Origin: Utricularia gibba
Lineage: Eukaryota; Plantae; Magnoliophyta
Assembly: GCA_002189035.1 (NCBI GenBank)
Contig: NEEC01000008.1
Location: 1,984,001 to 2,048,000 of the forward strand
Direction: 5' to 3'
Length of the DNA stretch: 64,000 nt
Shown: in pieces, positions 3,874-60,244 of the stretch
How the letters are laid out: each line of letters starts with the position of its first letter
Position numbering within the stretch: the first letter of the stretch is position 1
Notes under the pieces: model-generated
Database searches by the model: none
What the model saw: only the letters and a program-made list of their open reading frames with translations
What the model was told of the DNA's origin: nothing
Program-made: the position numbers and the translations under genes

Positions 3874-6295
3874 ATAACGTGAATACAAAAAATCCAATCT
3901 ACATTTCCAGTTTCAAGTCTTGCTGTATCTTGAATGAAACATGTTCCGTTATCAGCAGCTACCATTAAGAAAACAGCAACCCGATTTGCCCTCTAACTCG
4001 AAAAGAAGATGCAGGCTATAAAGAGTTAATCCTTCAACACCTGAAGTGGAAGATTTTCTGATCATGTGAGCACTTCAGTGAAGATTTTGTAGTTGTTTCC
4101 TCATAATTCGATACGTGTTTGTTCCTAGGTGCAAGCACTTGGTTTGCAGGGAAACGAACACTGAATAATCTGCAGGGAAGACGAATTATAGTCACCCGAA
4201 GGAGCCAAGATGCACTTTGTGCCCCTACTTTAGCTGCTGGTTATGGACAAGAAACCCCTCTTGCATTAAGAGGGAGGAGCCCAAACACAAGACTAAACAT
4301 GTACTGATAATTGAACAACCAGTACCGAGTTTCCCATTCCTCGGAGACGTTTTTAATGCTTTTGCAGGACACAGTGCAGACGGGCCCAGTGCGCAATGGA
4401 CCAGTGGTTCTCCTTTGCAAGACAATGCTTAAGTCGCTTAGATGGCTTTAAGATAAACAGTTCAACTTGCAGTAGTTCCCTTTTTATTAAGGTAGGCATC
4501 CTCCCACAGACTCCCATCTGCCATGAGTCGCAGATCACATCTGCTTGCTCCAAATGCACAGCAGTCTCAGCTGCGAGACGCCGCTACAGGTCCCGGAGAC
4601 TCCCCATACCCTCCTTACGCCGGCCGCAGTTGGTGCCTGAACCAGAAGACCTCACAAATTTTCTTCATTTGCCAGCTTGATTCGAATTGTTCCAGCGACA
4701 GCAATCCACCGCGGTGTCGCTATTCCTGTCTCCATAAATCCTTGCTGTCTCTGCAACTTGTCAGCAAGCCAAGGCAACTGCTGTACGCCAGATGAGGAAA
4801 TAAATTAAAATACCTCAAATCGAAACACAATTCTGGTCACTGAAAAACCCAAAATTATATTTTTGAAAAATAAGTATTAGCAAAAAAGCTTAGCAATAAT
4901 TTAGAAGTATGATTAGTGATGGAAAGGGGGTGTCCCATGTGCCTCCTGATTTGGTTAGGGGGTACTTTTCGATACCAATTCAACTCGTTTCTTGACCAAG
5001 ACATGTTAGTGTTTAGCTAATGATGGACGATCACCTCTTCCCACCCACCTCTTTTGAAATTTCACCATATACTAAGAAGCTCCACAACCAAATCGGGTTT
5101 GATTCTTGATGTTTTGAGTTTACATAAAAGTTATCAAAACAAACAACGTATGTTGTTAAGATTTGAAAATAAAATAGTTAATTAATAGTAATCGATTGAA
5201 TTTAATTTTTTTTAATATAATTCATATTTTTTTATGTATTTAAATTTTATATGTATGAGATTAATTCACAAGATAATTAATTTCAATAAAAATAATATTA
5301 AAAGAAGTATTTTATGGTCAATGACTAATTTACCCTCAATTGTAATTGATTTCATGGAACGGGGAACTCTTTCCATTTTAAGTAATTCAATTCGTTTAAA
5401 TTAGATTTGGACAAGAACTATTTCCACACAAATAAGATGTGTGTGAACTATTCAATTTGATATTTATAAGAAAAATATTTTGAATGGAATAAATCAAAGG
5501 TGTGTAAATTCTTAAAAAAGCAAGAAATATTCTCTTTTGAAGTATAAATAATTCGTGTGATCAAAAGAGAGTTCAATTGTAAAGTATCGGAAAAGATGCC
5601 TATGCTTGTGGAAAGAGCCCGATATTGTCCCTTGTGAGGTATGCAAACATTACACCGATACCTTTTGCAATTGGAGATCATAAAACTAAAGTTTAATCGA
5701 TAAAATAAAATAATCAAGTATATAATAAATTATAAATAATTATTAATTATTTAAATAATATTTTATAATATGATTTGCATTGTTTGTATATTCTGATTTA
5801 ACATATTATTATCAATTTTTTATATACTCTCAAGGGGCTCAAAACCTAGAAGCTGCGATTTTTTATTTAAAAAAAAGAAATTATAAATTAAAAGTTGTGT
5901 GCAGGCTGTAGGAGTCCCACAGGCCATAGCCAGTTCCCGACGAATGTGTGGAGAAAATGACGCGGGGGCGTCACGCGCACCACCACGCTCCCCATAATAA
6001 CGTGACATCCGACGCGCCTTTTCTTCCTTTTTTTTTCCGAAATGCATCATCAACATGTAGGGTTAATTTTTATGTAACCAACTCCAGATGTATGTTGTTT
6101 AAGAGGGGGTGGAATTGTGTAACATTCAATTACGGGGGACAAATCATAAAGGACGGGGGAGGGCAGTTCCGTAAATAGGGAGAGATCAAGGGGCCTGATG
6201 GCAAGCTTTTACTTGCCATCATTCATCTCCATTTCTCTTGTTTCCCTTTTCGTTTGTTCCAGCGGGAGGAAAAAGCTGTCGGTGGAACATTCGCG

Positions 6296-7837
6296 ATGAG
6301 GAAGGAACCACCGCCGCCGGTCGTCGGGAAGATCTTTCTCTGCGTCGAGAGCAAGCCCTTTTTCGCGGCATTACTTGCGATAACGGTTGTTGTGCTGCTC
6401 TGGAACCTCCAGCCGTATTACGAGAATATTCTATCCGCGTCTTCGCGTTGCGCCGCCGGTGCTGGGGTTGGGTCGATGGATTCGGCGGGTATTGAGTCTC
6501 TTAGTTTGGGGTTGACCACGGCGTCGGAGAAGAGGCTTGTTAGTCCGCCGGTGGATCCAGACAAGCGGGTCTTTAGAGCTTATGGTAGTGCGGCGGCGCT
6601 GTTTGTGCAAATGGGGGCGTATCGCGGTGGGCCGGCTACTTTTGCGGTGGTGGGTTTAGCGTCGAAGCCTACTCATGTTTTTGGGAAGCCTTGGTTCAAA
6701 TGCGAGTGGTTTCCCAACAATGGGAACTCCTCGGTTAGGGCTAAGGCCTACAAGATGCTTCCGGATTGGGGATATGGCCGCGTTTACACCGTCGTCATCG
6801 TCAATTGCACCTTCCCGGAGAATCCAAACGCCGATAACGGAGGCGGAAAGCTGATGCTCAACGCTTATTACGGGGAAAGTCCCCGCCGATTCGAGAAGTT
6901 CACGGTATTGGAGGAGGCGCCGGGCGCCTACGACGAGTCAAAATACCGGCCGCCGTACAAGTATGAGTACCTTTACTGTGGATCATCTTTGTACGGGAAC
7001 CTGAGCGCAGCGAGGATGAGAGAATGGATGGCCTATCACACTTGGTTCTTCGGACCCAGCTCCCATTTCGTCTTCCACGACGCCGGCGGGGTGTCCCCGG
7101 AGGTGAGGGCGGTCTTGGAGCCATGGAAGAGGGCTGGGAGAGTCACATTGCAAGATATTAGGGCTCAGGCGGAGTACGACGGTTACTATTACAATCAATT
7201 CTTGGTGGTAAACGATTGTCTCCACCGGTACCGCCACGCCGCGAATTGGACCTTCTATTTCGACGTGGATGAATACATCTATCTCCCCGACGGCAACACT
7301 CTGGAATCTGTGCTCCGAGGCTTTTCTAACAACACCCAGTTCACAATCGAGCAAAACGCCATGTCCAGCGTTCTCTGCGTCAATGACAGCAATCAGAAAC
7401 AGGATTATTCCAGGTGTAATTTCCACTCTGTTTCTTTCAATTCCACCAAATCAGCGAATCAATCGTTGGTCTAACTCTCCGATGAACGATCTGAATGAAG
7501 GCAATGGGGATTCGAGAAGCTGGTGTTCAGGGACTCCAGAACAAGAATCCGGCGAGATCGGAAATACGCGATTCAGGCGAAGAACGCCTACGCCACCGGC
7601 GTACATATGTCGGAAAACGTAATCGGCGGAACCCTCCACGCGACGGAGACCAAGATCCGATACTATCACTACCACAACTCCATCACCGTCCACGAGGAAC
7701 TCTGCCGGAAGCTAGTACCCACCGCTGCCTTGAACGCCACCACCTGGATCGATAAGGTACCGTACATTTACGACGACAACATGAAGAAACTTGCTCCCGC
7801 CATAAAACAGTTCGAGATGTCAGCCATCCGCCGGTGA
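6296..7837 (+). CDS. GALS1: Galactan beta-1,4-galactosyltransferase (GT92/DUF23), 2 exons (6296-7413, 7501-7837)
   Basis: Type II membrane anchor, then LFVQMGAYRGG, KPWFKCEW, YGRVYTVVIVNCTF, YLYCGSSLYGNL, REWMAYH, SHFVFHDAGG, FYFDVDEY. Intron 7414-7500 joins YSR|QWGFEKLVFR...KYAIQAKNAYATGVHMSEN...IRYYHYHNSI. Confidence 0.95.
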
Positions 7838-38561: not shown

Positions 38562-40437
38562 TTATGTGGACGACTTGGTGACCTTGAATCTGTAGAGCAC
38601 CTTCTTCTTCCTGGAGGTCTGGTTGTCGAAAGTGAGGACTACTTTGCCAGGTTCAGTTATCTTGAAGCTCGATTTGATGAGCTGTTCGTTTGAGCCGATC
38701 TTCCGAGGCTTCTGGACTATCCATGTGTAGCTGCCCTCCGCGCTAGGCTCGAATTCCACCCCGTAGCTAACTTCCCAACCGATGACTCTAACCTCCCAAG
38801 CAAGAGTGCCAAGTCCAGCCTGAAGATTGATGATGATGAGAGTTAACTACAATCCTGATTACGAATGACTCAGAATGTATGTTGTTACCTCGGTGATTGG
38901 GAATTCTACTGTGTGTTTCGAAGATGGCTTGATTGTTTCTTCAGTTGCAGGATCGGCGGGGGAGAATTCTTGTTCGCCTTTGTTACCAAGACCGCCATAT
39001 TGAACAGGAGTTGCTCCGGTGCTATGTACCTGCCATTGGAGGATTCGTTGATTTGTGGTTATCCCATTTCGAAGGTACGAGATTGAAGAAAAGAAGAAAC
39101 TTTACTGACTTGAGGAGGGTCTCGGAAGTTCTTGTCGGCCCTGCAAACACAAACTTGCTCTTGGTTCTCTGGGTCAAGAAGGGACTGATCAATCTGTTGT
39201 ACGCCACATACCACCAAGGCACGTTGATAATGATCTTCCAATTGAATAATCAAAAAATCAGTGGATGAATCAGTCAGCAAACACCAGCAAGATGAAAGTT
39301 TCCATGTACCTGTTTGGCTACGAATTCAGGATAATTGTCCTGGAGCAACTGAAGGGCCTGATTGGTGGATTGGCGAAGTTCCTTCTTGAACAACATTAGC
39401 CCTGGTGAATTCTTGAGATCAATGATCTGAACAATGGTGCAAACGCCTCCAGGGGAGAAATCTAGTTTCCTGATGCTCTTCTCCAGGAACTGGATGTACC
39501 ATTTCAAGAACTTAGATCTCTTTTCAGCGTCATCAAAAGTATTGCCGTAGAGAACCTTGTCTTGGAACTCCCCGAAAGCGTTGTAAGAAACTGGGTGACC
39601 TTCTTTATCAACTCCATGTAGATAAACAACTTTCTCAAGCCCCTCGATGATGAGTTCCTCTTCCAGGAGCTCATCGATTTTGAAATCTTTCCTCCAAGCC
39701 ACCACGTTTTTCAGCATAGCGAAAGCTTCTTTTACCTTGAAGTCTCTCGCTCTCAAAAATTTCAGTAGAATCACATCGCTTCTGTCATCAGCGAGAAGAG
39801 GGACGCCCCAGATGGAAACCTCCTCCGGAGGAGACGTCTCTGAAACAATAGGCTTCTTCTCTTCCTCCCCGGGAGTGGCAACGGGATCATCAGCTGGCGG
39901 TGGAGCAGGAGAGGTGACTTCGTGAACTATTGTCTCCTTGATCTTTTCAACAGCTTCTGATACTTTTTCCTCCGCTTCCGCCTCCGGATCTGCTGGATTT
40001 TCTTCAACATTTTCCTCTTTCACAATTAGGGCTGGCGGCGCTTCAGTGGGTTCCGCCTCCAGATCCTGATTTTTCTCCTCAGGGATGGACTCTTGCTTCT
40101 CCTCCTCAGCTACGGGCTGTTTTTTCTTGTCCTCAGCATCCTTGGACGGAGGCGGCGGCGGAGGGTTGAAAGCACGGTTGTTGAGGGCGTCCTGAATCAG
40201 GAACTTGAGTTCGTCCAGTGCTTTTTTTTCCGGATCCACGAGATCTTCAACCTTGTTGCTTTCCTCCTTAAACGACACACACTCCCCAATCGTCTTCACC
40301 TTCTTCTCCATTTCCTCCGCCTTCTCCAGCCCCTGCTCCGGCTGCGGAGGCAGCGCGTCCTTGTCCACCAAAACTCTACCCTCCTTTTCTAACAGAACCT
40401 TTGCATCCACAATCTTCGTCTCCTTTTCCATCTCCAT
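38562..40437 (-). CDS. PATL: Patellin (acidic N-terminus, CRAL-TRIO/Sec14, GOLD), 4 exons; one 1-nt frameshift in the assembly
   Basis: PEEVSIWGVPLLADDRSDVILLKFLRARDFKVKEAFAML...QDNYPEFVAKQ|IIINVPWWY...PFLTQRTKSKFVFAGP...LLK|YIAPEQ[LP]VQYGGL / GWEVSYGVEFEPSAEGSYT...GKVVLTFDNQTSRKKKVLYRFK. Frame break at 39007-39008. Confidence 0.93.
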
Positions 40438-41559
40438 CTCCAAAGACGCAATCTTGCTCACCCCCACACCACCCCTTTGTGTGTGAACTGTGTGTAGCCG
40501 TTACAGCAACTTCAAAACAATTCAAAGTTTTCCGAGGAGATTGGTGAACCTGCGACAGAATATAAAAAAGAGAAAACCGGGCGGGCCACCCGGAACCCGA
40601 ATACAGCTACCTTTTGTGTTCCGTTCCTGCATGGAAAACGGGTCAGATTTTATAAAAACGATTTTATATTAAAAAAAAGAAACTTAATTCTTTATTCCAA
40701 ATATATAATAAAAATAAATATAAATTTATGAAAAAAATAAAAATAATTAAATAAATATCAGAAAAGGGACTCGTTGTCCAAATTCTTGCCAGTCGATGGC
40801 ATCGAGATCTGGTCATGTTGATGTATGAAGGGGAACAGTCTGTCTAAGACACCAAAATTAGCCAGCTCCTTTCCCTTTCTAACGGGGGCCCACTTCTCCT
40901 CCTTTTTTTCTTTTTCAAAAACATTAAATATGTTTTTTATTAAAAAATATTTTATTTTTTGAAAAAAATACATATAAATATATCTAATTATTCTTTTTTA
41001 TCAGTTGTGATGATAAACATCTCACATATTTGAACAATTCAAATACCTTGAGTATTTAATCAACTTGCATTATATTTTATATATTTCATTTTTTGTATAG
41101 GGATTAGCGATCTCAACTTGGCTACGCAGACGGCGACCCGGGAGCCTCCACCGGAGCATTTGCTGTCCTGTCCACACACGGTGTTTTTTCCACCGAATGA
41201 GGGTGTTTATGCTTCAAGATGGACGGACCTCCGGCGGAGGAAGGTGTCGATTGGATGGAGGAGCTGGAGGCGCGTGTACCTCACGCGTTTCTGGTCATCG
41301 CCTTTATCATTTTCCCTGGCGTGTGTGAATCTGTGATTAGAGAGCTGGGGTTCACTTCCATCACGTGAACAATGATAACAGGATAACATGTCAATCCGTA
41401 TTTTCCGATGAAGTGCAGCAGAACGGCGGCATCAACCCTGACAACCGAGACATGGGCGAGTGTCTCGAGAAGGGGAGGAGGAAAAACCTGCAACTTGAGG
41501 TGGAATTTACGTACAGGAGATTTTACAAACGAATGGAGTGACGAAGGTATTTTAGGAAA

Positions 41560-43619
41560 CTACGCGCCGGTTGAGGATCTCCTAGTGAAGATAATGAAGG
41601 TAGCTAAGCCGGCGACGCTGATTGCGGCCAGTAACCAGTAAAAGTAATCGAGGTGGGCGCGGTTCAAGTCATCGGCGAACCACCCATCTCGCCCTCCGGC
41701 GCTGGTGACCTCCTGGATCACGGACACCATCAAGCTGCTCAATAGACTCCCGATCCCGAGGATGCTGAGGTACATAGAGAAACCGATACTCTTGAGATCA
41801 TCAGCAACTTGGTTGTAGAACAGTTCCTGAAGCCCGACCATTGCGAACACATCCGCTATCGCGGAGATGATGTACTGCGGGGCCAGCCACCACACACTCA
41901 TCGGAACATAGGCCGGAGGAGTGCCGCCAACGGCGTATTCGTGGGCGATGCGCAGACGTTTTTGTTCGACGATGGCTGCGCAGATGATCGAGATCCATGA
42001 AAGGAAGAGCCCGAATCCGATGCGTCGGTGGATCGATATGCCGGAGGGGTTCATGGTGATGGATCGGGCGACCGGGACCAAGACGCGATCGTAGAGAAGA
42101 ACAACAACCATGGCCACGGCTGTGAGCCAGTACTGCTGAAGTGACGCAGCCGGGATATCGATCGTCGGAGTTAAGTGAAGATCCAGTGTGGCTGCCTGCT
42201 TGGTGAAGAGAGTCGACGGCTGCGCATATATCATCGAGTAGCCTAACGAGGCGAACCAAATTGGGACAAGATCAAGAATTCTCTTTGCATCCTCTACGTC
42301 CGAAACACTGCACAGGTTCTCCTCCGACGACACACTCACGTTTTCCGATAATGCTTTGTCCAAGAACCTGCAGCACAAACCATGTTAAGAAAGCAAGCTA
42401 TTTCTTAACTAAAGTAATGGGACAACGTGCTCCTTTTTGAAGACCTGAACCGACAGCTTTGACCGTCTTTAATGGAAACAACATCGGGTGCACGCCATCT
42501 TCTTGCTGCATGGAAGAAAACACGGCCGATCCTTTTCAAAGGGTTTCTTCTTTGTTGATCAGTTTGGCGAAACCGGTAGGTCGGAGTTCCGAGGTAGAAG
42601 ACGACTAGTGCGATGAACAAGACAATGGCCGGGATCCCGAATCCCAGAAACCAGCTTACTTTTTCCTGAATATAGGATATCAAAACAAGAGGAAAAAGAA
42701 CCCCCGCGGTGAAGAGAAAATACCACCAATTAAAGAAGGAGCTTTTGGCCTTCGATTCACGCTCCACTTCGTTGTCGAATTGATCGGCTCCGAAAGCTTC
42801 AATGCAGGGAAGGATTCCGGCTTGGGCTATTGCCACCAAGTAGAAGGAGGCGTAGAAGACAGTGATCCGATACTTGCCCGGAAACGTATCCGGTGATGTA
42901 AACGTAGTCGATAGTGCCATGAAGCATAGTCCCTGGAAACATCATCCAACGCCGGAATTAGCCAACGAAAAACCGTTCCTAATCTGAATCGAACCAAACT
43001 CAGCCCACTATTGGAGAGTTGACACCGGAAGTTTAAAACCGCCGGTCTTACTGTCCGTTTCCAATTTAGCTGACTTTTGATACAGAAACCAATAGTATCT
43101 TTTCTATTGAAACAATATTAAATGTTATCTCCACCCATCGGTTTACTGTAAATCCACGCAAGCGTATGCGTGTTTGCGTACCGTCATGTATGGCACGGAT
43201 GCTATAACGATCATGCGGAATTTACCGCAAAATGAATCAGCGATAAAACCGCCGACAATCGGCAAAACCGAAGAAATCCCGAACCAGGCGTTCAAATTCG
43301 CGGCGGCGGACGCCGTCGACTGCCCCATCTGGTGGGTCAAGTAGCTGATGAGATTAAAACTTATTGCGTAGTAAGCAAATCTCTCAGCCACCCCAGCAAC
43401 TAAACAGAAAGACAAGTCAAAATCTGGGAAGAAAGAGCAGCGCAGAGAAGAATCCCGACACTCACATATGATGAAAGACGCGGATCGCCAGACTCCCGTC
43501 CTAGAGCGAACGGCGGGATGCCCCTTGAAGTCAACGGTGCCGAGGACGACGTCGTTCAACAGCGGAGTCGTAGCCTCCGGAGCACTGGCGCCCAGGTCGC
43601 ATACAATCGTGGTCGTCAT
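41560..43619 (-). CDS. NPF5: NRT1/PTR family (NPF5.10-like) transporter, tandem copy A, intact, 4 exons
   Basis: GTVDFKGHPAVRSRTGVWRSASFII|[11 protein letters not shown] / AFGADQFD...[11 protein letters not shown] / FLDKA...DVEDAK...[14 protein letters not shown]...IPAASLQ / WLAPQYII...[14 protein letters not shown]...[13 protein letters not shown]. Confidence 0.93.
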
Positions 43620-43806
43620 CTTTGCGGATCGGCGCTTCAGCAAGCCGAGTGAATGATTTGCAAGTCAGAACGGCAGTTGCAATTCAATATATTGCAATAA
43701 TGGAGGCCCAGCAGTTCCGGACATTTTTTATTGTCGTTGTAGGACCAGAATGTCGGTGGTTAATCAGGTGGGATTTTTTGCACCACGTTATTTTTTCGAG
43801 TGCCAG

Positions 43807-43914
43807 TTTTTTAGCTCATAAAATTGTTATTTTCAATTGACAAATTTTTTAGTTAATAAAATCGTTATTTTCATTCGTAAGTTTTTTAGTTAATAAAATC
43901 GTTATTTTCAATCC
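43807..43914. repeat. Tandem repeat of about 37-38 bp, three copies, in the NPF copy A promoter
   Basis: Core TTTTTTAGTTAATAAAATCGTTATTTTCA exact at 43845 and 43882, degenerate at 43807. Confidence 0.85.
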
Positions 43915-45355
43915 ATAAAAAACTAAGTTCTAATGGTTCCTGTCAAATTTCAAAGGTCAGGACCCTTGAAAGCAGTTCCCTGCTCTAATCAAAAAAACAA
44001 GACAAGACGACATAGAAGTCGGATAGTGTGATAGACGGGACAAACGCTACACTTTTTTATGATTATTTTTTTAAAACATGTAATAAACTAGTTATATATT
44101 TATATTAATTTATTTTTTAAAAAATATTAATTTCTCGCATTTGTAATAATTGGTTTCTCATTTAACATTAGAGACAAACCCAAGCTAGTACTTGATGATG
44201 GGGAGATAAACCTCAAGGAGGACCATGAATTTCTATGGAGGAAGGGAGGAGAATGTGATATCCCACCTAAGGAAGGGTAGAAGGAACCTAAGCAATGTTC
44301 CAAATCAATTATGGATGGAATAAATGATAAGATTGAATAGAATAATAATGCAAACATCACATAAGGTTTAAGTAATTTGAGAAAAGGTCTTTAGGTGAAA
44401 GTAATTTCCCGAACACATAGTAAAATGTCTTTGGTAAAAACTTCAAACTCAAATATATTTCGGGTTGAAGTAATTTGAGAATAGATAACATTTTTGGTAA
44501 GTGAAAAATGAGAATAATGTAAAATTATGAAAATGAATAATATCGTATAAATTGATTATAAATAATTATATTTGATATCATATCTAAATTATTGTGAGCG
44601 ATCAATACATGGAGCAAACTTCAACATATATCTCACTTAAATTGAGGCTACACATATTTTTGTAATAATAACAATTCATTTGAAAATATGTAGAAATTGA
44701 GGCTACATCATTTGATAGCTATTTAAAAACTAATATGATTTAGATTATTTATATTTAGATAAATCGTGAAACACATATTTATTTGTGATAATATATTTAA
44801 TAGATAAATTGTGATTATTAAGTTTTATGAAAATGCTTAGTAGAAGTGTTTAAAAATCAAGTTTTATAGATAAATTATTAAGTAGAAATTTTATGCAATT
44901 TTAAAAAAATTTACATAAGATGGGAGATTATAAAAAACCTATTTTGATTATTAAATCCATATATTTAATTATCTAGGCTACCTAACTATAGTACCCTAAT
45001 TCACCACGATATTCAAAATGGTTCCCTACTTCCACATTTGACCATATAATATATCAAATTGAACTTTAATGTGTGTGCTTGGTTGGTAGAAACCAACACG
45101 ATAAATACGTCACCCTTGCTTTGAAAATTATTAATTTATATCATTTTATATTTCATGATGCTGAATAGTGTTATAGTTTTAAAAAATGAATATAATTTTC
45201 CGAATTCTTATATGTTCCCATTTTTAATTACATAATTTTACAATGTTATAGATTGTAGAAATAAAAATGAAGAACATCTGGAGAAGGGAGACAGTGTGAC
45301 ATTTTACAATGAGAAATGTTAAGGTGCGAAGCAGAAGCGGCCGGCGGACTCCGAC

Positions 45356-47427
45356 TTACGCAGTACCTCTCCGATAAGAATAGGACCTCGTGAAGTAAAG
45401 GAAGAAGGCGAGTTCGACGGAGCTGATAAAAGCGAGTACCCAGTAAAAGTAATCAAGATGGGCGCGGTTGAGGTCGTCGGCGAACCACCCATACCGCCCC
45501 GAGCCGCCGGTCACCTGCTGAATGGTGGACACGAGGAAGCTACTCAGCAGACTCCCGATGCCGAGGATGCTGAGAAACAGGGACAGCCCAATGCTTTTGA
45601 GGTCACCAGCAACTTCACTGTAGAAAAACTCCTGAAGGCCGACCATTGCGAACACATCGGCCATGGCGGATATCATGTACTGAGGCGCTAGCCACCACAC
45701 GCTCATGGGGACGTAGGCGGAGGGGGAGTCCTCCAGGCCGTGTTCACGGGCAATGGCGAGGCGATTCGTTTCGACCACGGCGGCGAAGATTATCGAGATC
45801 AATGAGAGGAACATGCCAAAGGAGATACGCTGCAGCATGGATATGCCAGACGGGTTCTTAGTGATGGATCCGGCCAGCGGGACGAAGACGCGGTCGTAGA
45901 GAGGAAGGGCTATGACGATGACCGCGGAAAGGAAGCATATTTGCAGTGAAGCCGCCGGGATTTCGATTGAAGGAGTGATGTGTCGGTCAAGAGTGGCTGC
46001 TTGCTTGGTGAACAGAGACGATGGCTGCGCAAAGATGATTGAGTAACCTAACGAAGTGATCCAAATTGGTGCGAGACTGAGAATCCCCTTCGCATCTTCC
46101 ACGTCCGAAACCGTGCAAACACTGTCCTGTCACAATCCATTCGATCCCAGCAATGCCTTGTCCAGGAACCTGAAACAACACAAAGCGCTCCACCGAATCA
46201 AAAAAAGAAAATTAATTGGATTTGCTGCGTCTTCGGCTGGGAATACTTACGTGAACCGATGACTCAGGCCCTCATGAGACGTTTCAGCATTGGGTGCACG
46301 CCAATGTCTAGCAGCTTGAGAGAAGACATGACGGATCCTGAGGAAAGGGTTTCTTTGATGGGAATGTCGCCGAAGCCGATACGTCGGAATCCCGATGGAG
46401 AAGAAAGCCAACCCCAAGCACATAACCGCATTTGGAATGACGAAGCCCAGAAACCAGCTCACGTTTTCCTGAATGTATGTTGTGCAGATTGCGGGGATCA
46501 TAATGCCTCCAGAGCTTATGCAATACCACCAGTTAAAGAAGGAGCTCTTGGCCCTTGACTCCTTTTCAGTTTCCTCGTCGAACTGGTCAGCCCGAAGGCT
46601 TCTATGCACGGAAGGAAGCCTCCCTGAGCTAAAGCCACCAAGTACGAGGAGAAGAAAAAAAAAGTGACCGCCAGCGTGCTCTGTGACGCCCCCGATGACG
46701 TAAACGTAGTCGATACCGTCACCAAGCAAAGCCCCTGAAATGGATAAAAACGCATCTCAAAACTTTTTGTTATTTTTAGAAAACTAAAAAATATATAAAG
46801 CACTAAATCCAATAAATGATGCGATACTTGCCATTTCAAGGTGGGTATGGATGTCCGAAAATAGCGTACTTTTTACTTAAATGTGAAAAAAAATTCATAA
46901 TCAAATCCTTATATTAACCCCAAAAGGGATGGTAAAAGTGAGGAGAAACCTACGGCGATGTAGAGGAGGGAGGAAATAATGATCATTCGGAAGCGGCCCA
47001 AGAAGGAGTCGGCGAGAAAGCCACCGGCGATGGGCAAAAGGGCGGAAACACCGTACCAGGCGTTGGAGTTCGCGGCGGCGGAGGCGACCGACAGCCCCAT
47101 CTTGTTGGTCAAGTAAGTTATCATATTGGAACCCATCCCGTAGTACGCGAATCTCTCAGCCACGCCGGCGCCTGCAACCCAAAAGGAAACCCGGATTTGA
47201 AGCGGGAAACCAAAAGGGGGGAATTGGAATTGGATTCGAAGCAAGCAAGCAAACAAACACAGACATATTATGTAGGACGCGGATCTCCATATCCCGGACT
47301 TGGATCGCACCGACGGCCGCCCTTTGTAGTCAACGGAACCGGAAACGACGTCCTCCAGCAGCGGCGTCTCAGCCTCAGCCTCCTCCCACCCCACCGTGGT
47401 CGGGTCTGCTGCAAAGATCGTCGCCAT
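45356..47427 (-). pseudogene. NPF5: NPF5.10-like transporter, tandem copy B, with an in-frame premature TGA and a 1-nt frameshift
   Basis: Same four-exon layout as copies A and C. The frameshift at 46591-46593 (AFG-ADQFD) is in a G-run. The last exon reads [27 protein letters not shown], with TGA at 46130-46132. The rest of the frame is well conserved. Confidence 0.6.
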
Positions 47428-49500
47428 TTTTCTATACAACTACCGGCGTACCGTCCCGTCCCGTCCCTCCCGTCTTATTCTTCCCCAGTTTCAGCACATC
47501 TCACCGACGGTGTGCACCACTGCGCTTTTTATCAACTTTCTTTCTTGGCCACATTAAATAATAATAATAATAATATCCATACTTTCACCTGTTGAAGAAG
47601 AAGCTGCTATTTGGTGACGTGGGCTCTGCTCATCCGGGGACTGCTTTAGAAGTTGCGGTGGGCCCGCTTTGCGTGCGTCATCAACGATGAAGCTTTCACG
47701 TTGGCGTGGGATCACCTCCTCCACCAGTCTTTTTTTTTTTTTTTTATATTTTTAAACAAGAAAAAACGGGGGTGTGGTAGGAATGTCAGTATCTGGTGAG
47801 CTGAATTATGAAGGGACGGGGACCTCCTTTTCATATACAATAATTGAGATTATAAATCACATTTCATAGCATAGTTTAATTTTTTATAGCATATTTAAAC
47901 TATAAACCAAAATTAATAATATATTTCGAATAAATGACTATATGGTATAATTTCTATTCAATTGAACCCACTTCTCCCTTTCAAAAATAGGTAACCAAAG
48001 AGTTTTTCTTTTCAACTTTTTATTGTTGTTTGTTTCGTACTATTTTGTTTTTCATTTGCTTTTGGTGCTACGCCATTCCCGTCAAAGAAAAGGAGGAGAT
48101 GGGGCACATGAAAGTTACGTATCTCCTCAAACCACAATTACACGATACACACGTGGCAAGTGTATGCCATCATTCACGAGGTGGGTTTATTATGAGTTCA
48201 GACAATTGTGGATAGAGTTGAAAGAAACCAACAATCTAACAAATGGATCTACATATCAAGAAGAACAAGGTTTTAAATTCTAAAAAATCCCGCATTACAT
48301 TTTGGTTAATTGGTTGTTTAAATACTCGTGTATTGATGACAGTGTATTTTTGTTAAATCTATCTAATAATACAGAACACTTGGAATGTTGATTTTATTGA
48401 AATTAAAAGATCGATAGATCGGATGAATGAATACGTGAAATTTAAATATACATAAACGTGGACCTTAATAAAGAAGATTATGTATAATCGATTTTTAGTA
48501 ATTTATAAACCATAATTTTTTATATATTTGAATATTTTATTTTCATTTGTTTTAATAGATTTTTGTTAATAATTCAAGTTATAAAGCATTTATTTTAAAA
48601 CATACATGACAAATACAATATTATTCTAAGCATATATGTACAAAATCTATATATCAAACAAATTCGTAAACTTAATCATATGATACGTGTTTATTTAAAT
48701 ACAAATAATTCAAATATAATATTAATTAAACCGGCATATCAAACACACTGTAAATGAACTTTGCATGTTTATCTTGGATGTTCGCTTTCATTTTGACTAT
48801 TTATCTTCGTTGTTCTGAGTATTTTATATTTTCCGAAATGTTAACGTGTTGTAGTGAATCATGTCACTAAAATTGTTTATCGAACCATCCTTTTTGCGAT
48901 AATAACATTGCATTTTTAATTCAATGGCTTGTGTTAGTGTACCGGAAAATGAGTAACGCAAGAGAACTTTAATAAAATACAATAAAATTCAACAAATACA
49001 TTGAAATTCAAGGCAACTAATGTCTCCACTTTCAATGACTTACGAATGAAGAATACCCGGTACAAATCATTAAACAAATTCAAAGTCTCATCTTATACGT
49101 TATTATCATCTACATCTAAATATTCTTTTTCCTAAGGATTGGGTTGACATCTCTTTTAATCGAATAGAAAATAGTATTACAAATTGTTTTATACCCGAAA
49201 AAAAAATTTGAACCAATTCTACAAATTTTATTTTTTATTATGACAAAGACATTAAACCGTAATTCACTATTAGTTGAATTATAATGAAATTATGATTAGA
49301 TTGTGCTTTTTTTTATATTTTAATATAATTTGAATTTAATTAAAGCATTAGATTGACAGGTTCACAATTCTTATCATAGTTGAATTGTGATTTTTGAAAC
49401 CCTAAACTAGGACATTCCAACCATGGACCTTCAATTTGTCCCTATTGCAAAGGAATTAGAACATTCTGACCATAGATGTCAAGATGTTGAAACCTCTAAT

Positions 49501-49524
49501 GGATCCGGATCCGGATCCGGATCC
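49501..49524. repeat. Self-complementary tandem repeat (GGATCC)4
   Basis: Four perfect GGATCC units forming a 24-bp palindrome in the NPF B-C spacer. Confidence 0.95.
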
Positions 49525-49978
49525 GTAGACGAAGAAGGGGAAGGGAAAGTTGGGAACAGCTGGACTGATAGGGAAAATTCAAAACTTCTTAATATTTGAT
49601 AATAAAATTATTTTTAAATGTTTTTTCAAAAATATAATTTATTTGCAATAGCCCCCTCGATTTTTATGTTTTTTCGAATCATCATCTTCTATACTCAAAA
49701 AGTGTAAATATGTCTATCAGATACAATATATTTGAATTTTATTGATGTTTTGGGAATTGGCATGGTGATATTAATGTTCCCATTATCCGTTATTTGTCAC
49801 ATTGTTGCTTATTTACATCCAGCTCCTTTTTCTTTTCGTTATTAATTTTCAGTACCCATTGCAAAGCACAAGCTACCTCTTTGTAATAATGATATTTTAT
49901 TTCAAAATTTACAACGCAATAAAGCAATCCATGAATTTTGCAACACATACCAAAACTATTTAATAAATTTTTCGAAAT

Positions 49979-51902
49979 TTAGAAAGTGTTCCTTCTCCGG
50001 TAGACGTAGGACCGGTTGAAGAAAAGGAAGGCGGCCAGACCGGCGGCGCTGATTCCGGCCAACAGCCAGTAAAAATAATCGATGTGCGCACGGTTCAGGT
50101 TGTCCGCGAACCATCCGTATTGCCCCTGTTTGCTGGTAACCTCTTGAATTGTAGACACGAGGAAGCTGCTGAGCAGACTCCCGATGCCGAGGATGCTCAG
50201 GTACAGGGAGAGGCCGATGCTCTTGAGGTCACTAGGGACTTGGTTGTAGAAGAATTCCTGGAGGCCAACCATTGCAAATATGTCGGCCAGGGCGGAGAGA
50301 ATGTACTGAGGTGCCAGCCACCACACACTCATCGGAATGTAGGCCGCCGGAGTATCGTCCAGGCCGTACGCGCGTGCGGTGGCGAGACGTTTTTGCTCTA
50401 CGAAGGCAGCGAAGATGATCGAGATCAAGGAAAGGAAGAGCCCGAATGAGATGCGCTGCAGCATGGTTATGCCTGAGGGGTTCTTGGTGATGGATCGGGC
50501 GATGGGGACGAAGACACGGTCGTATAACGGAAGGCCGATCATGATCACGGCGGTGATGAAGCATTGCTGAAGAGAAGCGGCCGGGATTTCGATCGAGGCG
50601 GTCAGGTGACGATCTAATGTGGCCGCTTGTTTGGTGAAGAGAGTTGAAGGCTGTGAGTAGACAATGGCGTAGCCTAGAGATGCAACCCAGATTGGGGCAA
50701 GGCGAAGAAGCCCTTAGCGTCTTCTACATCTGAAAGGCTGCAGATTTTCTCATCCAGGTACCCATCAGAGGCCAGCAGTGCCTTCTCCAGAAACCTGTTT
50801 GTCAGAGGGGAAAATACCAATGAATTCTGGTTCTACTGAAGCAAGCAATTGTTGCGGAAAAAGAACTTGTATGTCGACTTACTTGAATCCTGAAGCTTCA
50901 GGGGAGGAATCCTGGTGGCCTTGTTGTTCAAGTGAAGCAGCAGGATTAGGAGCACGCCAGTTTCTCAATGCCTTGACGAAGACACGGTTGATTCGCAGAA
51001 ACGGATTGGTCTGATCGGCGGTGACTCGAAACCTGTAGCTCGGAGTGCCGAGCAAGAAGATGGCCAAGGCGGCGCACATGACAACAGCAGGGATGCCGAA
51101 CCCAAGGAACCAGCTCACATTTTCCTGGACGTAGGTGATGCAAAGCAGAGGAGCGAGGATACCCCCGACGCTTAGACAATACCACCAGTTGAAGAAGGAG
51201 CTTTTGGCTTTAGATTCGCGTTCGACTTCGTCATCGAACTGATCAGCTCCAAAAGCTTGAATGCAAGGGGTGAGGCCTCCTTGAGCTATGGACACCAGGT
51301 ACATGGAGAAGAAGAAGAAGTATATCCGAAGAGTTTCGGAATTGAGTGAAGTAATGGTGGTTGAAAGAGCCAAGCAAGAGAGTCCCTGTAATCCGAGAAA
51401 CTGTGTCAGCAAAAACAGAGTACCCACGAAACCTCCATTTCAAGACTTTGGTAGTGAAAAAACTCACCGAAATGTAGAGGATGGAGGAAATAATGATCAT
51501 CCTGAATCGGCCGACAAACGAATCGGCCAGGAAAGCACCGAGGATCGGCAAAAGCGACGACGTTCCGAACCAGGCGTTGAGCATCGCTGCGGCGGATGCT
51601 GTCGGTTGCCCCAACTCAGTACTCAAATAGCTCACCAAGTTCAAACTTATCCCATAGTAAGCGAATCTCTCAGCTACTCCGGCGCCTGAAACAATCGAAC
51701 CTCTCACTTCAATCTCAGGAACAAGAAACATTAGAAGGCAAACAAAACAGGGTCCTCACTAACATGTAATGAAAGAAGCCGACTTCCAAATCCCGGTCTT
51801 GGATCGCGCCGCTGGACGCCCCTTGAAATCAACAGCTCCCAGAACGAAGTCATCGATGAGAGGAACCTCAGCCTCCGGCACAGTGGATACAATTAGCGTC
51901 AT
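49979..51902 (-). CDS. NPF5: NPF5.10-like transporter, tandem copy C, 4 exons; one 1-nt frameshift in the assembly
   Basis: [46 protein letters not shown]|[11 protein letters not shown] / [26 protein letters not shown] / [14 protein letters not shown] (break at 50711-50713) ...[14 protein letters not shown]...[19 protein letters not shown]...[13 protein letters not shown]. Confidence 0.9.
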
Positions 51903-57580: not shown

Positions 57581-60244
57581 TCACAAAGGTAGGCATCGCT
57601 TGCTCATGATGGTTTTCCAACTTCTTTTTCTTCGCCTCCATTTCACTAGAGCCATTTTCTCATTTCTCCATCTTCTGTACCTTCCACGGTTCTTCAACCA
57701 AGCAGAGTAATCTTTGCCTTGTTTGCATTCGATAAAATCGATTATGTCATCTAAATTTGAGTCATTTTTTCTCTTCTTTACAATGCATTTGAAGAACATC
57801 TCCCCATTAGATGTCTCTGTTTCTTCTTCCAGGCCCTCAGGGTCATCCCCGATTTCCCTGAGCAATGAACAGTTTCAACAGTGAGCTTTTTGTGTGCATC
57901 AGTAAAAGAGCAGGTTCAATGCTAACATTACCTGGAACAAAGAGACCTTGTCTTTTGAAATTTCATTGCAACTGCAAGGCTGGAATTTCTGCCAAATGAT
58001 GTCTGTATTGCACAAAAAAGATGGTTCAACGCTTACCAAGATGATCAAAAAGGGGAAAAAAAAGGCATCGAGCAAATGCTCTACCCCATTGACTCTTATC
58101 GCTGATAGGTGAGAGGGCAAAGACTGTTTGAGTGAAATCAACATTGATTTTAATGCATCTCCACCACCATCTTCGAAGACAAAGAAATTCAAGAGAGCCA
58201 GAAGGGTCATCAAACAGCCTTTAGCTAAGCAATCAAGCCCACTGGCAAAGCTCAGCGACAACAATCCTGAGAAATGCAGGAACATCATTTTTGAATCCAT
58301 GTGCCTTGAGGGATGAGATGCCATCAAGCGGGATGCGGCTTGTTGCAGAGGCAAACTAGTGTCCAAATCTCTGAAACACTCTATAGTACTCAACATGAAG
58401 TTATATTCTTTGCATGAAGTGATAACTTTGGGGCGATGAAAGCCATCACTGTCTCTGATAGATCGGACAGCTTGTAGCATGGAGATACTCATCAACTTCA
58501 AAAGGGAAACAACAAGAGATATGTGCTGAAGAGTTTCCCCATCTAATGGCTGTACTGATTTACAATCACAATTTTCAGAAGCTTTCAGGACTAAGCATGT
58601 TAAGATGGCAAAAACTTCATCCTGAGATTGCATGGCATAGAGATTCTGGGATTCTTTCACAAATCTCATGCAAGAACTCACCATGTTGGAGTTCATCATG
58701 AAGAAACCATCGCCTGTGCTCAGATCTGGAGAGCTGTCTAACTCTTCAATGACTGTATTAATCCATCTTCTTGTCTCAGGCGATATGTATGATTCAAACT
58801 GCAGCTGAGAAGTATCGTTAGGTGAAATATGTTTGAAGCCACCTAAAAATGCAGTGTAGCCATCATTTTGCCAACTATACATGTGTGTCATGTACAAGCT
58901 GACTGACTTCTCAAAGGTTGATAAGAAGCTGCTGATCAGTTTTTTATCTGATTTCATGACTCTGATATCAATAACTTCTGAAACTAGAGAAATCACATGA
59001 ACTTGCAAATATTTTGGAGCCGAAACCATGATCGGACTGAGAAGCAACGATATCGCTCCATCAATACTCAAAGCAGGAGCTCCAAAAGGATATTTTGATT
59101 CCTTGGCATGAAAACAGAATAGGAAACTTAGAAATTCTCGCAGACCTTGCTTGCCAGAAAATGACATAATAAAATGAAAGGATATAGCTTCACATAGAAC
59201 CCCCGTATCACTAGGACAATGCTGTGGATTGAAAAGAATGCCATTGACTGAAGCAAGGGAATTAATCAACTTGAAGTAACTCCTTAAACGCCCGTGAGCC
59301 AAAAGCTCGTCTATAAAGACCTGCCAAAAGGCATTTAACGAAGCCTGTGAGCCTATGGAAAAGCATATGTAATTGCACAAGCATAGGTCAGCGGACACAT
59401 ACCTCCAAAATGCTACACCTGAGACAAAGGAAGGGACTGCGAGGCTCCAGGATTTGCAAGGAAGCAGAGAATTCATTGAGAGAACTTTCACAAAGAACTG
59501 ACTTCTCAAAAACAAAAGCCGTTTTCCTTGTGTTTATTGGTGAATTTGAAAAGCTCAACCTTTTCATTATCTTGAGAAGAATCAACCCCTTTTCCAAGAT
59601 ACGATTTTGCTGGCCTGCAAGCAAGATCAAGAGTAACATGCAACATCTAAAGAGCAGTGTAAGCACTTCCACTTTATCCAAGATGCCGATATCTTTTGTG
59701 GCATCACCATTGCAGAAACTCGACAATAAAGTCTCAAACTTTTCTTGTATCTCCTTGAAGAGTATCCCAGAGAGATCCCAAGCATCTCGAAAGCCCAATG
59801 TCGTCCCGTTATGACAAACAAGAATGTTAAATTCATGTGGAGGTGAAACAACCTCAGCATTGCATTGTTCCGTTGAAGACAAACTGACTAAACGATTATA
59901 CAAATTCTCCAGGAAGGGTCGGCTTATGCCCTGAAACATTAATTCAGGCGTCACTAACAAAACTGTTTAAGGTAATCTGCAAAGGTAACTGCACATCTGA
60001 ATGCAAAGAAGTTTTGGCGCTAAAAATCACAAGATGAGCACATCTTCTCGTCTTCTAACAATGTTAATTCAAAGCATTCATAGCAGACAAACAAACAGAT
60101 GCAAAGAATGGAATTCGAATTTCGAACCTCGGAGGATTTGATGAAATGGAGAAGGGCTTCGCCATTGTAGAATTTGTCTAAAGAATCACCCTTGGAGGGT
60201 TTAGTCGAAGCCGTTTTCTTTTTTCTGCGGTTCCGTCGTCCCAT
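57581..60244 (-). CDS. Uncharacterised conserved plant protein (recalled as At4g27510/DUF7812-like), 5 exons, basic NLS-like ends
   Basis: Exons join in phase: MGRRNRRKKK...KSSE|GISRPFLENLY...PFLCLRCSILE|VFIDELLAHGRL...|TSFGRNSSLAVAMKFQK|REIGDDPEGLEEETETSNGEMFFKC...DDIIDFIECKQGKDYSAWLKNRGRYRRWRNEKMALVKWRRRKRSW. Confidence 0.75.

What the first reader, a model, noticed from the sequence alone, without database searches (positions are those of the whole stretch)
41560..51902. Tandem NPF5 trio that has lost both key proton-coupling residues (ExxER to GxxER; TM4 Lys to Leu/Thr)
Seen in sequence: after splicing, TM1 reads [11 protein letters not shown] (A), [11 protein letters not shown] (B) and [11 protein letters not shown] (C), where typical NPF5 has [13 protein letters not shown]4 reads [31 protein letters not shown] and [18 protein letters not shown], where typical NPF5 has [16 protein letters not shown]. 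The TM10 Glu (GLQEF/LFY) is kept. Established: in POT/NPF transporters the ExxER/K motif and the TM4 Lys (E41, E44, R45 and K164 in NPF6.3/NRT1.1, recalled) form the proton-coupling network, and natural loss of the motif is linked to passive transport or efflux, as in the NAXT-type NPF2s. Inference: the shared double loss predates the triplication and marks a clade of uncoupled facilitators or exporters, possibly for a specialised metabolite, hormone or ion. Copy A is intact and C has only a likely assembly indel, so these are substitutions rather than general decay.
Basis: partly seen in the sequence, partly recalled or inferred. Interest (0 to 1): 0.72.

Follow-up and report, generated by a model that had tools for sequence, protein, structure and literature searches.

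The report
Lamiales NPF5 transporters lacking coupling residues
Three neighbouring plant transporter genes really do lack two residues usually tied to proton-driven transport, but the same kind of loss is already catalogued in this family, is shared by a whole group of mint-order plants, and does not by itself show how the proteins transport.

Summary
Three minus-strand, four-exon NPF (PTR2/POT) genes read GxxER in TM1. At the TM4 His-Lys position they read IL (A), FL (B) and LT (C). The TM10 Glu is kept.

Public reads changed the picture. Both frameshifts (B and C) are assembly errors at homopolymers. All B and C introns are confirmed by spliced RNA contigs from three studies. B carries a real in-frame TGA that reads TCA in another genotype.

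The double change is not peculiar to this trio. It marks one well-supported clade of NPF5.10-like proteins from at least seven core-Lamiales families. That clade is nested among ordinary ExxER/HK paralogues and sits in tandem arrays with them. Conservation is close to that of the ordinary paralogues. C is the conservative copy; A and B evolve about 2.5-3 times faster.

The "uncoupled facilitator or exporter" reading is not supported:
- AtNPF5.11 (QxxER, Lys to Asn) is electrogenic and pH-dependent, and shows no efflux.
- Bacterial DtpC (QxxEY) is classed as proton-coupled.
- NAET1/2 (AxxER, Asn), on the other hand, are thought to load nicotianamine into secretory vesicles.

A published survey already found that 18% of NPF5 proteins lack the motif. 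My verdict is a new member of a known kind, of modest interest.

The parts
41560..43619 (-). Gene A (555 aa, intact ORF). Exons: 43619-43466, 43399-43182, 42932-42445, 42367-41560. It is the most divergent copy, and two of its splice donors are weak (GTACGC, GTCTTC).
   Evidence: Its splicing was not checked with reads. Transcription is only inferred from the word share of run X2.
43392..43394 (-). A: Gly54 codon (GGG) at the E1 position of ExxER. Glu57-Arg58 (43385-43380) are kept.
42810..42815 (-). A: Ile164-Leu165 at the TM4 His-Lys position.
45356..47427 (-). Gene B (559 codons). Exons: 47427-47265, 47171-46954, 46734-46251, 46169-45356. The 5' UTR reaches at least 47540.
   Evidence: Spliced RNA contigs of X2 and X10 confirm introns 2 and 3 as joints. 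Intron 1 is supported by an X10 contig piece that runs from exon 2 to exon 1, with 5 contig letters not placed at the junction, where a skipped repeat lies (47234-47269).
46590..46591 (-). B: assembly error. One G of a GGGG run (minus strand) is missing. With it restored, TM4 reads AFGADQFD in frame.
   Evidence: table 4: 'put in behind 46590: C' in X2, X10 and X6 (DNA).
46130..46132 (-). B: in-frame TGA (codon 302). The nonsense allele is present in the reference and in X2. X10 reads TCA (Ser).
   Evidence: (table 3, place 46131)
47164..47166 (-). B: Gly57 codon at E1. Phe167-Leu168 at the TM4 position lie at 46617-46612.
49880..51902 (-). Gene C (558 aa once the assembly error is corrected). 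Exons: 51902-51764, 51685-51468, 51385-50883, 50794-49979. The mRNA 3' end with its poly(A) lies near 49880. It is the most conservative copy.
   Evidence: All three introns are confirmed in X2, X10 and X14. X14 has a 1788-nt contig with a poly-T loose end..
50710..50711 (-). C: assembly error. One G of a G run is missing. With it restored the protein reads [12 protein letters not shown].
   Evidence: table 4: insertion seen in X2, X10, X14 and X6.
51678..51680 (-). C: Gly49 codon at E1. Leu157-Thr158 at the TM4 position lie at 51274-51269. The TM10 Glu467 lies at 50257-50255.

Best explanation
A, B and C are lineage-specific tandem copies of a core-Lamiales subclade of NPF5.10-like transporters.

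On the stem of that subclade two changes were fixed once. The first Glu of the TM1 ExxER motif became Gly, and the TM4 Lys became a small or neutral residue (Thr in most members, later Leu in A and B). The second Glu, the Arg and the TM10 Glu were kept. About a dozen other conserved positions also changed.

Shown here: single origin, long retention, near-normal protein conservation, transcription and correct splicing of B and C, and a conserved N-terminal acidic dileucine motif.

Inferred:
- They are working secondary transporters, probably on the tonoplast like Arabidopsis NPF5.10-5.16.
- They have a remodelled central cavity.
- They most likely still respond to the proton gradient through the remaining Glu-Arg pair and the TM10 Glu, as AtNPF5.11 does with QxxER and Asn.
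- They are therefore more likely proton-dependent carriers than uncoupled exporters.
- The substrate is unknown: nitrate by analogy, or a lineage-specific metabolite.
- C keeps the ancestral role. A and B are faster-evolving, partly relaxed copies, and B is being lost in some genotypes.
For: Family and gene models.

Expression and error correction: spliced contigs with CT..AC joints in three studies, a poly(A) end for C, and both frameshifts restored in RNA and DNA runs.

Clade:
- The nearest relatives are Lamiales 'NRT1/PTR FAMILY 5.10(-like)' proteins.
- All 33 G-state proteins plus A, B and C form one clade, support 1.0. Its sister is an ExxER/HK plus QxxER/FK pair, support 0.992. A+B+C has support 1.0.
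- The TM4 position is T 24, L 5, S 3, A 2 and never K or R.

Constraint:
- dN/dS is 0.13-0.23 among A, B and C.
- G-type orthologue pairs are 75-84% identical, against 79-91% for ordinary paralogues of the same species pairs.
- C changes 2 of 123 near-invariant sites, A changes 12 and B changes 5. Tajima relative-rate tests give p<1e-4.

Localisation:
- (D/E)x3-5L(L/I) is present at the same place in A, B, C and in 28 of 33 clade members, against 6.6% in shuffles.
- This motif sorts NPF8.3-8.5 to the tonoplast (PMC5383025).
- AtNPF5.10/11/12/14/16 are tonoplast proteins.

Coupling analogues:
- AtNPF5.11 is QxxER with Asn and is electrogenic and pH-dependent, with no efflux.
- DtpC has Q1XXE2Y and is classed as proton-coupled. 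In it one carboxylate at either position suffices.
Against: - No transport, localisation or substrate data exist for any member of this clade.
- Gly at E1 is a more radical change than Gln, and E1-to-Gln or E1-to-Ala mutants of canonical POTs and of NPF6.3 lose uptake.
- AtNPF5.8/5.9, with AxxER and Asn, are proposed to move nicotianamine out of the cytosol into secretory vesicles, so the same residue pattern can go with export.
- The AtNPF5.11 change arose independently, so the analogy is not homology of state.
- dS among A, B and C is saturated (1.1-1.6), so the omega values are rough.
- The dileucine match is a short motif.
Confidence: 0.55

Rival explanations
1. Loss of E1 and the TM4 Lys has uncoupled transport from protons. 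The clade would then be passive facilitators or exporters of a hormone, ion or specialised metabolite. At the tonoplast or in vesicles these would let a substrate run down its own gradient.
For: - E1, E2 and R mutants of NPF6.3 lose uptake, and the motif is tied to proton coupling.
- NAXT-type NPF2a proteins, which lack the motif, are passive nitrate or chloride efflux carriers.
- AtNPF5.8/5.9, with AxxER and Asn at Lys164, load nicotianamine into secretory vesicles.
- Both residues changed on the same stem branch, together with other conserved positions. That looks like a coordinated change of mechanism.
Against: - AtNPF5.11, with the equivalent double change and from the same NPF5.10-16 group, is electrogenic and pH-dependent and showed no efflux.
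- All NPF4 and NPF7 proteins lack a full motif, yet they include nitrate influx carriers and proton-coupled proteins.
- DtpC lacks E1 and is classed as proton-coupled.
- E2, Arg and the TM10 Glu are strictly kept in the clade, whereas NAXT proteins lost every chargeable residue.
Confidence: 0.3
2. The trio is a decaying gene cluster, and the odd residues are part of general erosion in copies that no longer matter.
For: - B carries a premature stop in the reference genotype.
- A has two weak splice donors and 12 changes at near-invariant sites.
- A and B evolve 2.5-3 times faster than C.
Against: - The same residues are fixed in 33 intact proteins of seven or more families.
- C is intact, conservative, spliced and polyadenylated in three studies.
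- Both frameshifts are assembly errors.
- dN/dS is well below 1.
- B's stop is absent in another genotype.
Confidence: 0.05

Closest known systems
Arabidopsis NPF5.11 (AT1G72130), a tonoplast low-affinity nitrate transporter
   Same: It belongs to the same NPF5.10-5.16-like group. E1 is lost (QxxER), the TM4 His-Lys is replaced (Tyr-Asn), and E2, Arg and the TM10 acid are kept. The TM3-TM4 loop is shortened.
   Different: Its change arose independently in Brassicaceae, with Gln rather than Gly and Asn rather than Thr or Leu. It was the outgroup of the tree. Its function is measured, whereas the trio's is not.
Ordinary NPF5.10-like paralogues of Lamiales (for example Paulownia Pfo_020998 and Pfo_020997, and Forsythia P0004)
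   Same: They are 51-60% identical to A, B and C. They lie in the same tandem arrays as the clade members of other Lamiales (locus tags). They share the N-terminal motif and the TM10 Glu.
   Different: They keep the full ExxER and His-Lys. One search lists 17 diagnostic positions that separate the two groups.
Arabidopsis NPF5.8/NPF5.9 (NAET1/2), which move nicotianamine into secretory vesicles
   Same: They are NPF5 members with AxxER and Asn at the Lys164 position, and the TM10 acid is kept.
   Different: They are much more distant. The NAET-like representative P0046 is 38% identical over exon 4, against 51-52% for NPF5.10-like representatives. Their loops and N-terminus differ.
NAXT-type NPF2a (AtNPF2.1-2.7)
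   Same: They are natural NPF variants without a canonical motif. They are organised as tandem clusters and are linked to passive efflux.
   Different: They belong to a different subfamily. All chargeable TM1 residues are lost, yet 89% keep the TM4-TM10 pair. That is the opposite pattern to the trio.
E. coli DtpC/DtpD, the atypical POTs
   Same: E1 is replaced and E2 is kept (Q1XXE2Y). They are still classed as proton-coupled.
   Different: They are bacterial peptide carriers. The Arg is also replaced, and a compensating Asp sits in the pocket.

Membership tests
POT/PTR family (Pfam PF00854), MFS fold | Significant match to the PTR2 profile across the protein. | tested here: met
   Exons 3 and 4 of A, B and C match PF00854 with E 9e-28 to 6e-38, above the gathering score. 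PDB hits are NPF2.10, NPF6.3 and SLC15.
NPF5, NPF5.10-5.16-like group | Closest relatives are NPF5.10-like proteins. Typical blocks are present (xAERFAYYG, [12 protein letters not shown], [13 protein letters not shown]) and the gene has four exons. | tested here: met
   The best full-length hits are all named 'NRT1/PTR FAMILY 5.10(-like)'. They are 62-72% identical to the Paulownia clade member. No tree of all eight NPF subfamilies was built.
Canonical proton-coupled POT/NPF | Complete E1xxE2(R/K) motif on TM1. | tested here: not met
   Gly at E1 in A, B, C and in 33 clade members. E2 and Arg are kept.
Canonical proton-coupled POT/NPF | Basic residue on TM4 (Lys164 of NPF6.3) paired with an acid on TM10. 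| tested here: not met
   TM4 has Leu (A, B) or Thr (C). The TM10 Glu is present.
Canonical proton-coupled POT/NPF | pH-gradient-dependent, electrogenic substrate uptake. | not testable with these tools
   This needs oocyte, yeast or liposome assays.
NAXT-type NPF2a efflux carriers | NPF2 clade membership and no chargeable residue in the TM1 motif. | tested here: not met
   The nearest relatives are NPF5.10-like. E2 and Arg are kept.
NAET (NPF5.8/5.9) nicotianamine carriers | Orthology to AtNPF5.8/5.9 (TM1 LLIVIAG(I/M)ERYAFK, TM4 GxGVLNPS). | tested here: not met
   The NAET-like representative P0046 is 38% identical over exon 4, against 51-52% for NPF5.10-like representatives. The TM1 and TM4 strings differ.
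Tonoplast NPF | N-terminal (D/E)x3-5L(L/I) sorting motif, and tonoplast localisation. | tested here: inconclusive
   The motif is present in A, B, C and in 28 of 33 clade members, against 6.6% in shuffles. Localisation itself was not tested.

The most novel reading that the evidence does not exclude
The Gly/Thr clade is a core-Lamiales innovation. A tonoplast NPF5 would have had its proton-coupling site rebuilt when it switched to a lineage-specific cargo, for example the iridoid or phenylethanoid glycosides typical of the order, or prey-derived nitrogen compounds if this genome is a carnivorous member. It would now work by a coupling mode not yet described for NPFs. The ordinary paralogue sitting next to it in the same array would serve as a ready-made natural control.
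Probability: 0.12. Interest if true: 0.6.

Novelty: new member of a known kind. Interest (0 to 1): 0.3.

Why it matters
Whether the ExxER motif and the TM4 Lys are needed for proton coupling in plant NPFs is still argued from scattered cases.

This clade offers a clean natural comparison:
- The double substitution arose once.
- It has been kept across many families.
- The proteins are expressed.
- In Paulownia, Penstemon, Rehmannia and Castilleja, clade members sit beside unchanged paralogues in the same tandem array.

Testing one such pair would show whether Gly/Thr proteins still use the proton gradient.

For annotation, the result is a warning. Motif loss alone should not be used to label an NPF as an exporter. 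It also shows that this assembly carries homopolymer indels that mimic pseudogenes.

Tried and rejected
1. The joined (spliced) proteins were never sent to a search tool. Searches were made exon by exon by reference. Joined models were used only in local scripts for alignment, trees and rates.

2. A first fragment alignment (A1) scattered the exon-1 pieces and was dropped. A2 was used instead.

3. The representative library gave mostly fragmentary or fused gene models at 52% identity or less. It was useful only for leads (P0004, P0008, P0029, P0046).

4. A word search with A's exon 4 was meant to find same-species transcripts and so test A's expression. Nothing above 63% identity came back, so the species and its near kin are absent from that collection in the length range searched.

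5. The string GVAERF was not found in the held part of Longo's Table S1. That file is cut after about a quarter of its rows, and the only Lamiales species surveyed (Mimulus) lies beyond the cut, so this says nothing.

6. The midpoint-rooted tree split the G-state proteins in two. Rooting on the Brassicaceae NPF5.11-like sequence showed one clade, so the midpoint root was rejected as a long-branch artefact.

7. Pseudogene decay was considered and rejected for C and for the clade (see the rival explanations).

8. Structure prediction was not run. The tool returns no coordinates, and the residue equivalences were already fixed by the alignment to NPF6.3.

9. Read laying allowed only one 6,000-base stretch.
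Full report
WHAT IS THERE

The region holds three paralogous genes on the minus strand. Each matches the PTR2/POT profile and has four exons with GT-AG introns.
- A spans 43619-41560 and is an intact 555-codon frame.
- B spans 47427-45356.
- C spans 51902-49979.
- A tblastn of A against the window finds no further copy.

- TM1 has Gly where the first Glu of ExxER should be, while Glu-Arg are kept.
- TM4 has Ile-Leu (A), Phe-Leu (B) or Leu-Thr (C) where ordinary relatives have His-Lys.
- The TM10 Glu is kept.

phmmer against PDB chains aligns A's Leu165 with Lys164 of NPF6.3 and with the Arg of NPF2.10.

In an alignment with 88 ordinary NPF5.10-like proteins, E1 is Glu in 100% and the TM4 pair is His-Lys in 99-100%. 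The departure is real.

WHAT THE READS ADD

One 6,000-base stretch (45903-51902, covering B and C) was laid with contigs of four public runs. X2, X10 and X14, from three different studies, contain contigs that skip C's three introns and B's introns 2 and 3 exactly as modelled, with CT..AC ends. They are therefore RNA, and they confirm the gene models. B's intron 1 is seen in an X10 contig piece that runs from exon 2 to exon 1, with five contig letters unplaced at the junction beside a skipped repeat. X14 has a 1,788-nt contig of C that ends in a poly(A) tail near 49880. X6 has no joints and is DNA.

Both frameshifts in the window are assembly errors at short G runs:
- A base is restored after 46590 (B) in X2, X10 and X6.
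- A base is restored after 50710 (C) in all four runs.
- With these bases, B reads AFGADQFD in frame and C is an intact 558-codon frame.

B also has an in-frame TGA at 46132-46130. X2 otherwise shows no difference from the window over B (table 8) and keeps the TGA. X10 is a different genotype and reads TCA (Ser). The stop is therefore a segregating nonsense allele, not an error.

X2 holds about 47% of the sampled words of 41903-51902, but only about 27-30% are accounted for by B and C on the laid stretch. The remainder is about the size of B's last exon plus A's exons. This is consistent with A being transcribed but does not show it.

AGE AND CONSTRAINT

Pairwise Nei-Gojobori estimates among A, B and C give dS 1.1-1.6 and dN/dS 0.13-0.23. 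The triplication is old or the lineage is fast, and most of the history was under purifying selection. The dS values are saturated, so the ratios are rough.

With three different outgroups, Tajima relative-rate tests show A and B accumulating about 2.5-3 times more amino-acid changes than C (p<1e-4). Of 123 near-invariant columns, A changes 12, B changes 5 and C changes 2. C, not A, is the best-preserved copy.

RELATIVES

The spliced proteins were not sent to any search tool. Searches used exons by reference.

A scan of 50%-identity representatives with A's exon 4 gave NPF5.10-like models at 52% identity or less. These included some with Gly at E1.

A profile of one full-length relative plus the trio's exons, followed by a search with the nearest full-length hit, Paulownia P0164, returned named proteins.

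The trio's nearest relatives (56-72% identity) all come from core Lamiales and all share Gly at E1 and a non-basic TM4 residue. They come from:
- Paulownia
- Rehmannia, Castilleja, Striga and Phtheirospermum
- Sesamum
- Buddleja
- Penstemon
- Phlomoides, Salvia and Perilla
- Andrographis

In a tree of 125 sequences rooted on the Arabidopsis suecica NPF5.11-like protein:
- The 33 G-state proteins form one clade (support 1.0). It also holds a fragment that lacks TM1.
- Its sister is a pair of Lamiales paralogues, one ExxER/His-Lys and one QxxER/Phe-Lys (support 0.992).
- A, B and C form their own group (support 1.0).

A midpoint root had split the clade and was rejected.

No G-state protein from Oleaceae, Gesneriaceae or outside Lamiales appeared in either top-120 list. 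All of those are ExxER/His-Lys.

Within the clade the TM4 position is Thr 24, Leu 5, Ser 3, Ala 2 and never Lys or Arg. Fifteen further positions that are conserved in ordinary paralogues are also changed, several in blocks such as AAxNVNxW, FFNWWY and LFTKQG.

Locus tags show clade members in tandem arrays. In Paulownia (Pfo_020993-021000), Rehmannia and Castilleja they sit beside ordinary paralogues. In Penstemon, RD792_011091-011094 is a run of four clade members.

Orthologue pairs of the clade are 75-84% identical. Ordinary paralogues of the same species pairs are 79-91% identical. Constraint is nearly normal.

WHAT IS ALREADY KNOWN

Longo et al. 2018 (PMC6288477) surveyed 2,383 NPFs. Only 82% of 567 NPF5 proteins keep ExxER/K and only 85% keep the TM4-TM10 pair.

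Their Table S1 lists AtNPF5.11 as QxxER with Asn at Lys164, and AtNPF5.8/5.9 as AxxER with Asn. I saw the NPF5.11 state directly in the A. suecica protein P0170.

He et al. 2017 (PMC5526873) found the following for NPF5.11:
- It is on the tonoplast.
- It gives inward currents with nitrate at pH 5.5.
- It takes up 15N-nitrate at pH 5.5 but hardly at pH 7.4.
- It showed no efflux.

Killer et al. 2022 (PMC9309889) describe DtpC, in which the motif is Q1XXE2Y and one carboxylate at either position suffices.

On the other side:
- NAXT-type NPF2a proteins, which lack the motif, are passive efflux carriers.
- NPF5.8/5.9 are thought to load nicotianamine into secretory vesicles.

Other independent erosions in NPF5.10-like proteins turned up in Oldenlandia, Papaver, Triticum and another Buddleja gene.

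HOW IT MOST LIKELY WORKS

Shown: the trio belongs to a conserved, expressed clade in which the two residues changed once and stayed changed.

Inferred:
- The proteins are working carriers.
- They carry a conserved N-terminal (D/E)x3-5L(L/I) motif. It is present in A, B, C and in 28 of 33 clade members, against 6.6% in shuffles. This motif sorts NPF8.3-8.5 to the tonoplast, and the Arabidopsis NPF5.10-16 proteins tested are tonoplast proteins.
- The strict retention of E2, Arg and the TM10 Glu, together with the behaviour of NPF5.11 and DtpC, makes continued proton dependence with an altered cavity the more likely mode (about 0.55).
- Uncoupled or export-type transport is less likely (about 0.3).
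- The substrate cannot be read from the sequence.

VERDICT

The mechanistic part is not supported, and its stated refuter is largely met by published work on AtNPF5.11.

The kind of variant is already catalogued. The Lamiales clade itself does not seem to have been singled out in the papers I could search.

That made me think of a bladderwort relative, which would fit the Lamiales placement and the long branches. I did not test this, and nothing in the report rests on it.

Noticed in passing
window 46590, 46917 and 50710: The assembly lacks single bases at short homopolymer runs. Two of these fake frameshifts in coding exons of B and C. The third lies in B's intron 2 and is seen in the DNA run X6 only. 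Other apparent pseudogenes in this genome may be artefacts of the same kind.
   Followed up: yes
window 46130-46132: B carries a premature TGA in the reference genotype and in run X2, but TCA (Ser) in run X10. This is a segregating loss-of-function allele in a transcribed gene.
   Followed up: partly
window 49880-51877 (run X14) and 46112-47086 (run X10): RNA contigs from other studies differ from the window at about 1-1.5% of exonic positions. Examples are 28 differences over the 1.75 kb of C in X14, and 14 in B in X10 record 2. This points to divergent accessions or a close relative filed under the same organism label.
   Followed up: no
window 50135-50344 and 45903 onward (run X2): One X2 contig joins C's last exon to B's last exon (the 'goes back 4442' joint). 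This is most likely an assembler chimera through shared words in the two paralogues, not a real transcript.
   Followed up: no
window 39274-40467 (-), 57899-59515 (-), 6254-7474 (+): Neighbouring long ORFs match CRAL/TRIO (Sec14-like), DUF7812 and glycosyltransferase family 92. None is related to transport.
   Followed up: partly
A, B and C proteins, between TM3 and TM4 (for example window 42932-42830 in A): The extracellular TM3-TM4 loop is about 15-20 residues shorter than in ordinary NPF5.10-like proteins and lacks their Cys pair. AtNPF5.11 also has a shortened loop.
   Followed up: no
P0290 (Buddleja Bualt08G0141800), sister group of the clade: This paralogue has QxxER and Phe-Lys. It may be an intermediate or a parallel state next to the Gly/Thr clade.
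   Followed up: no
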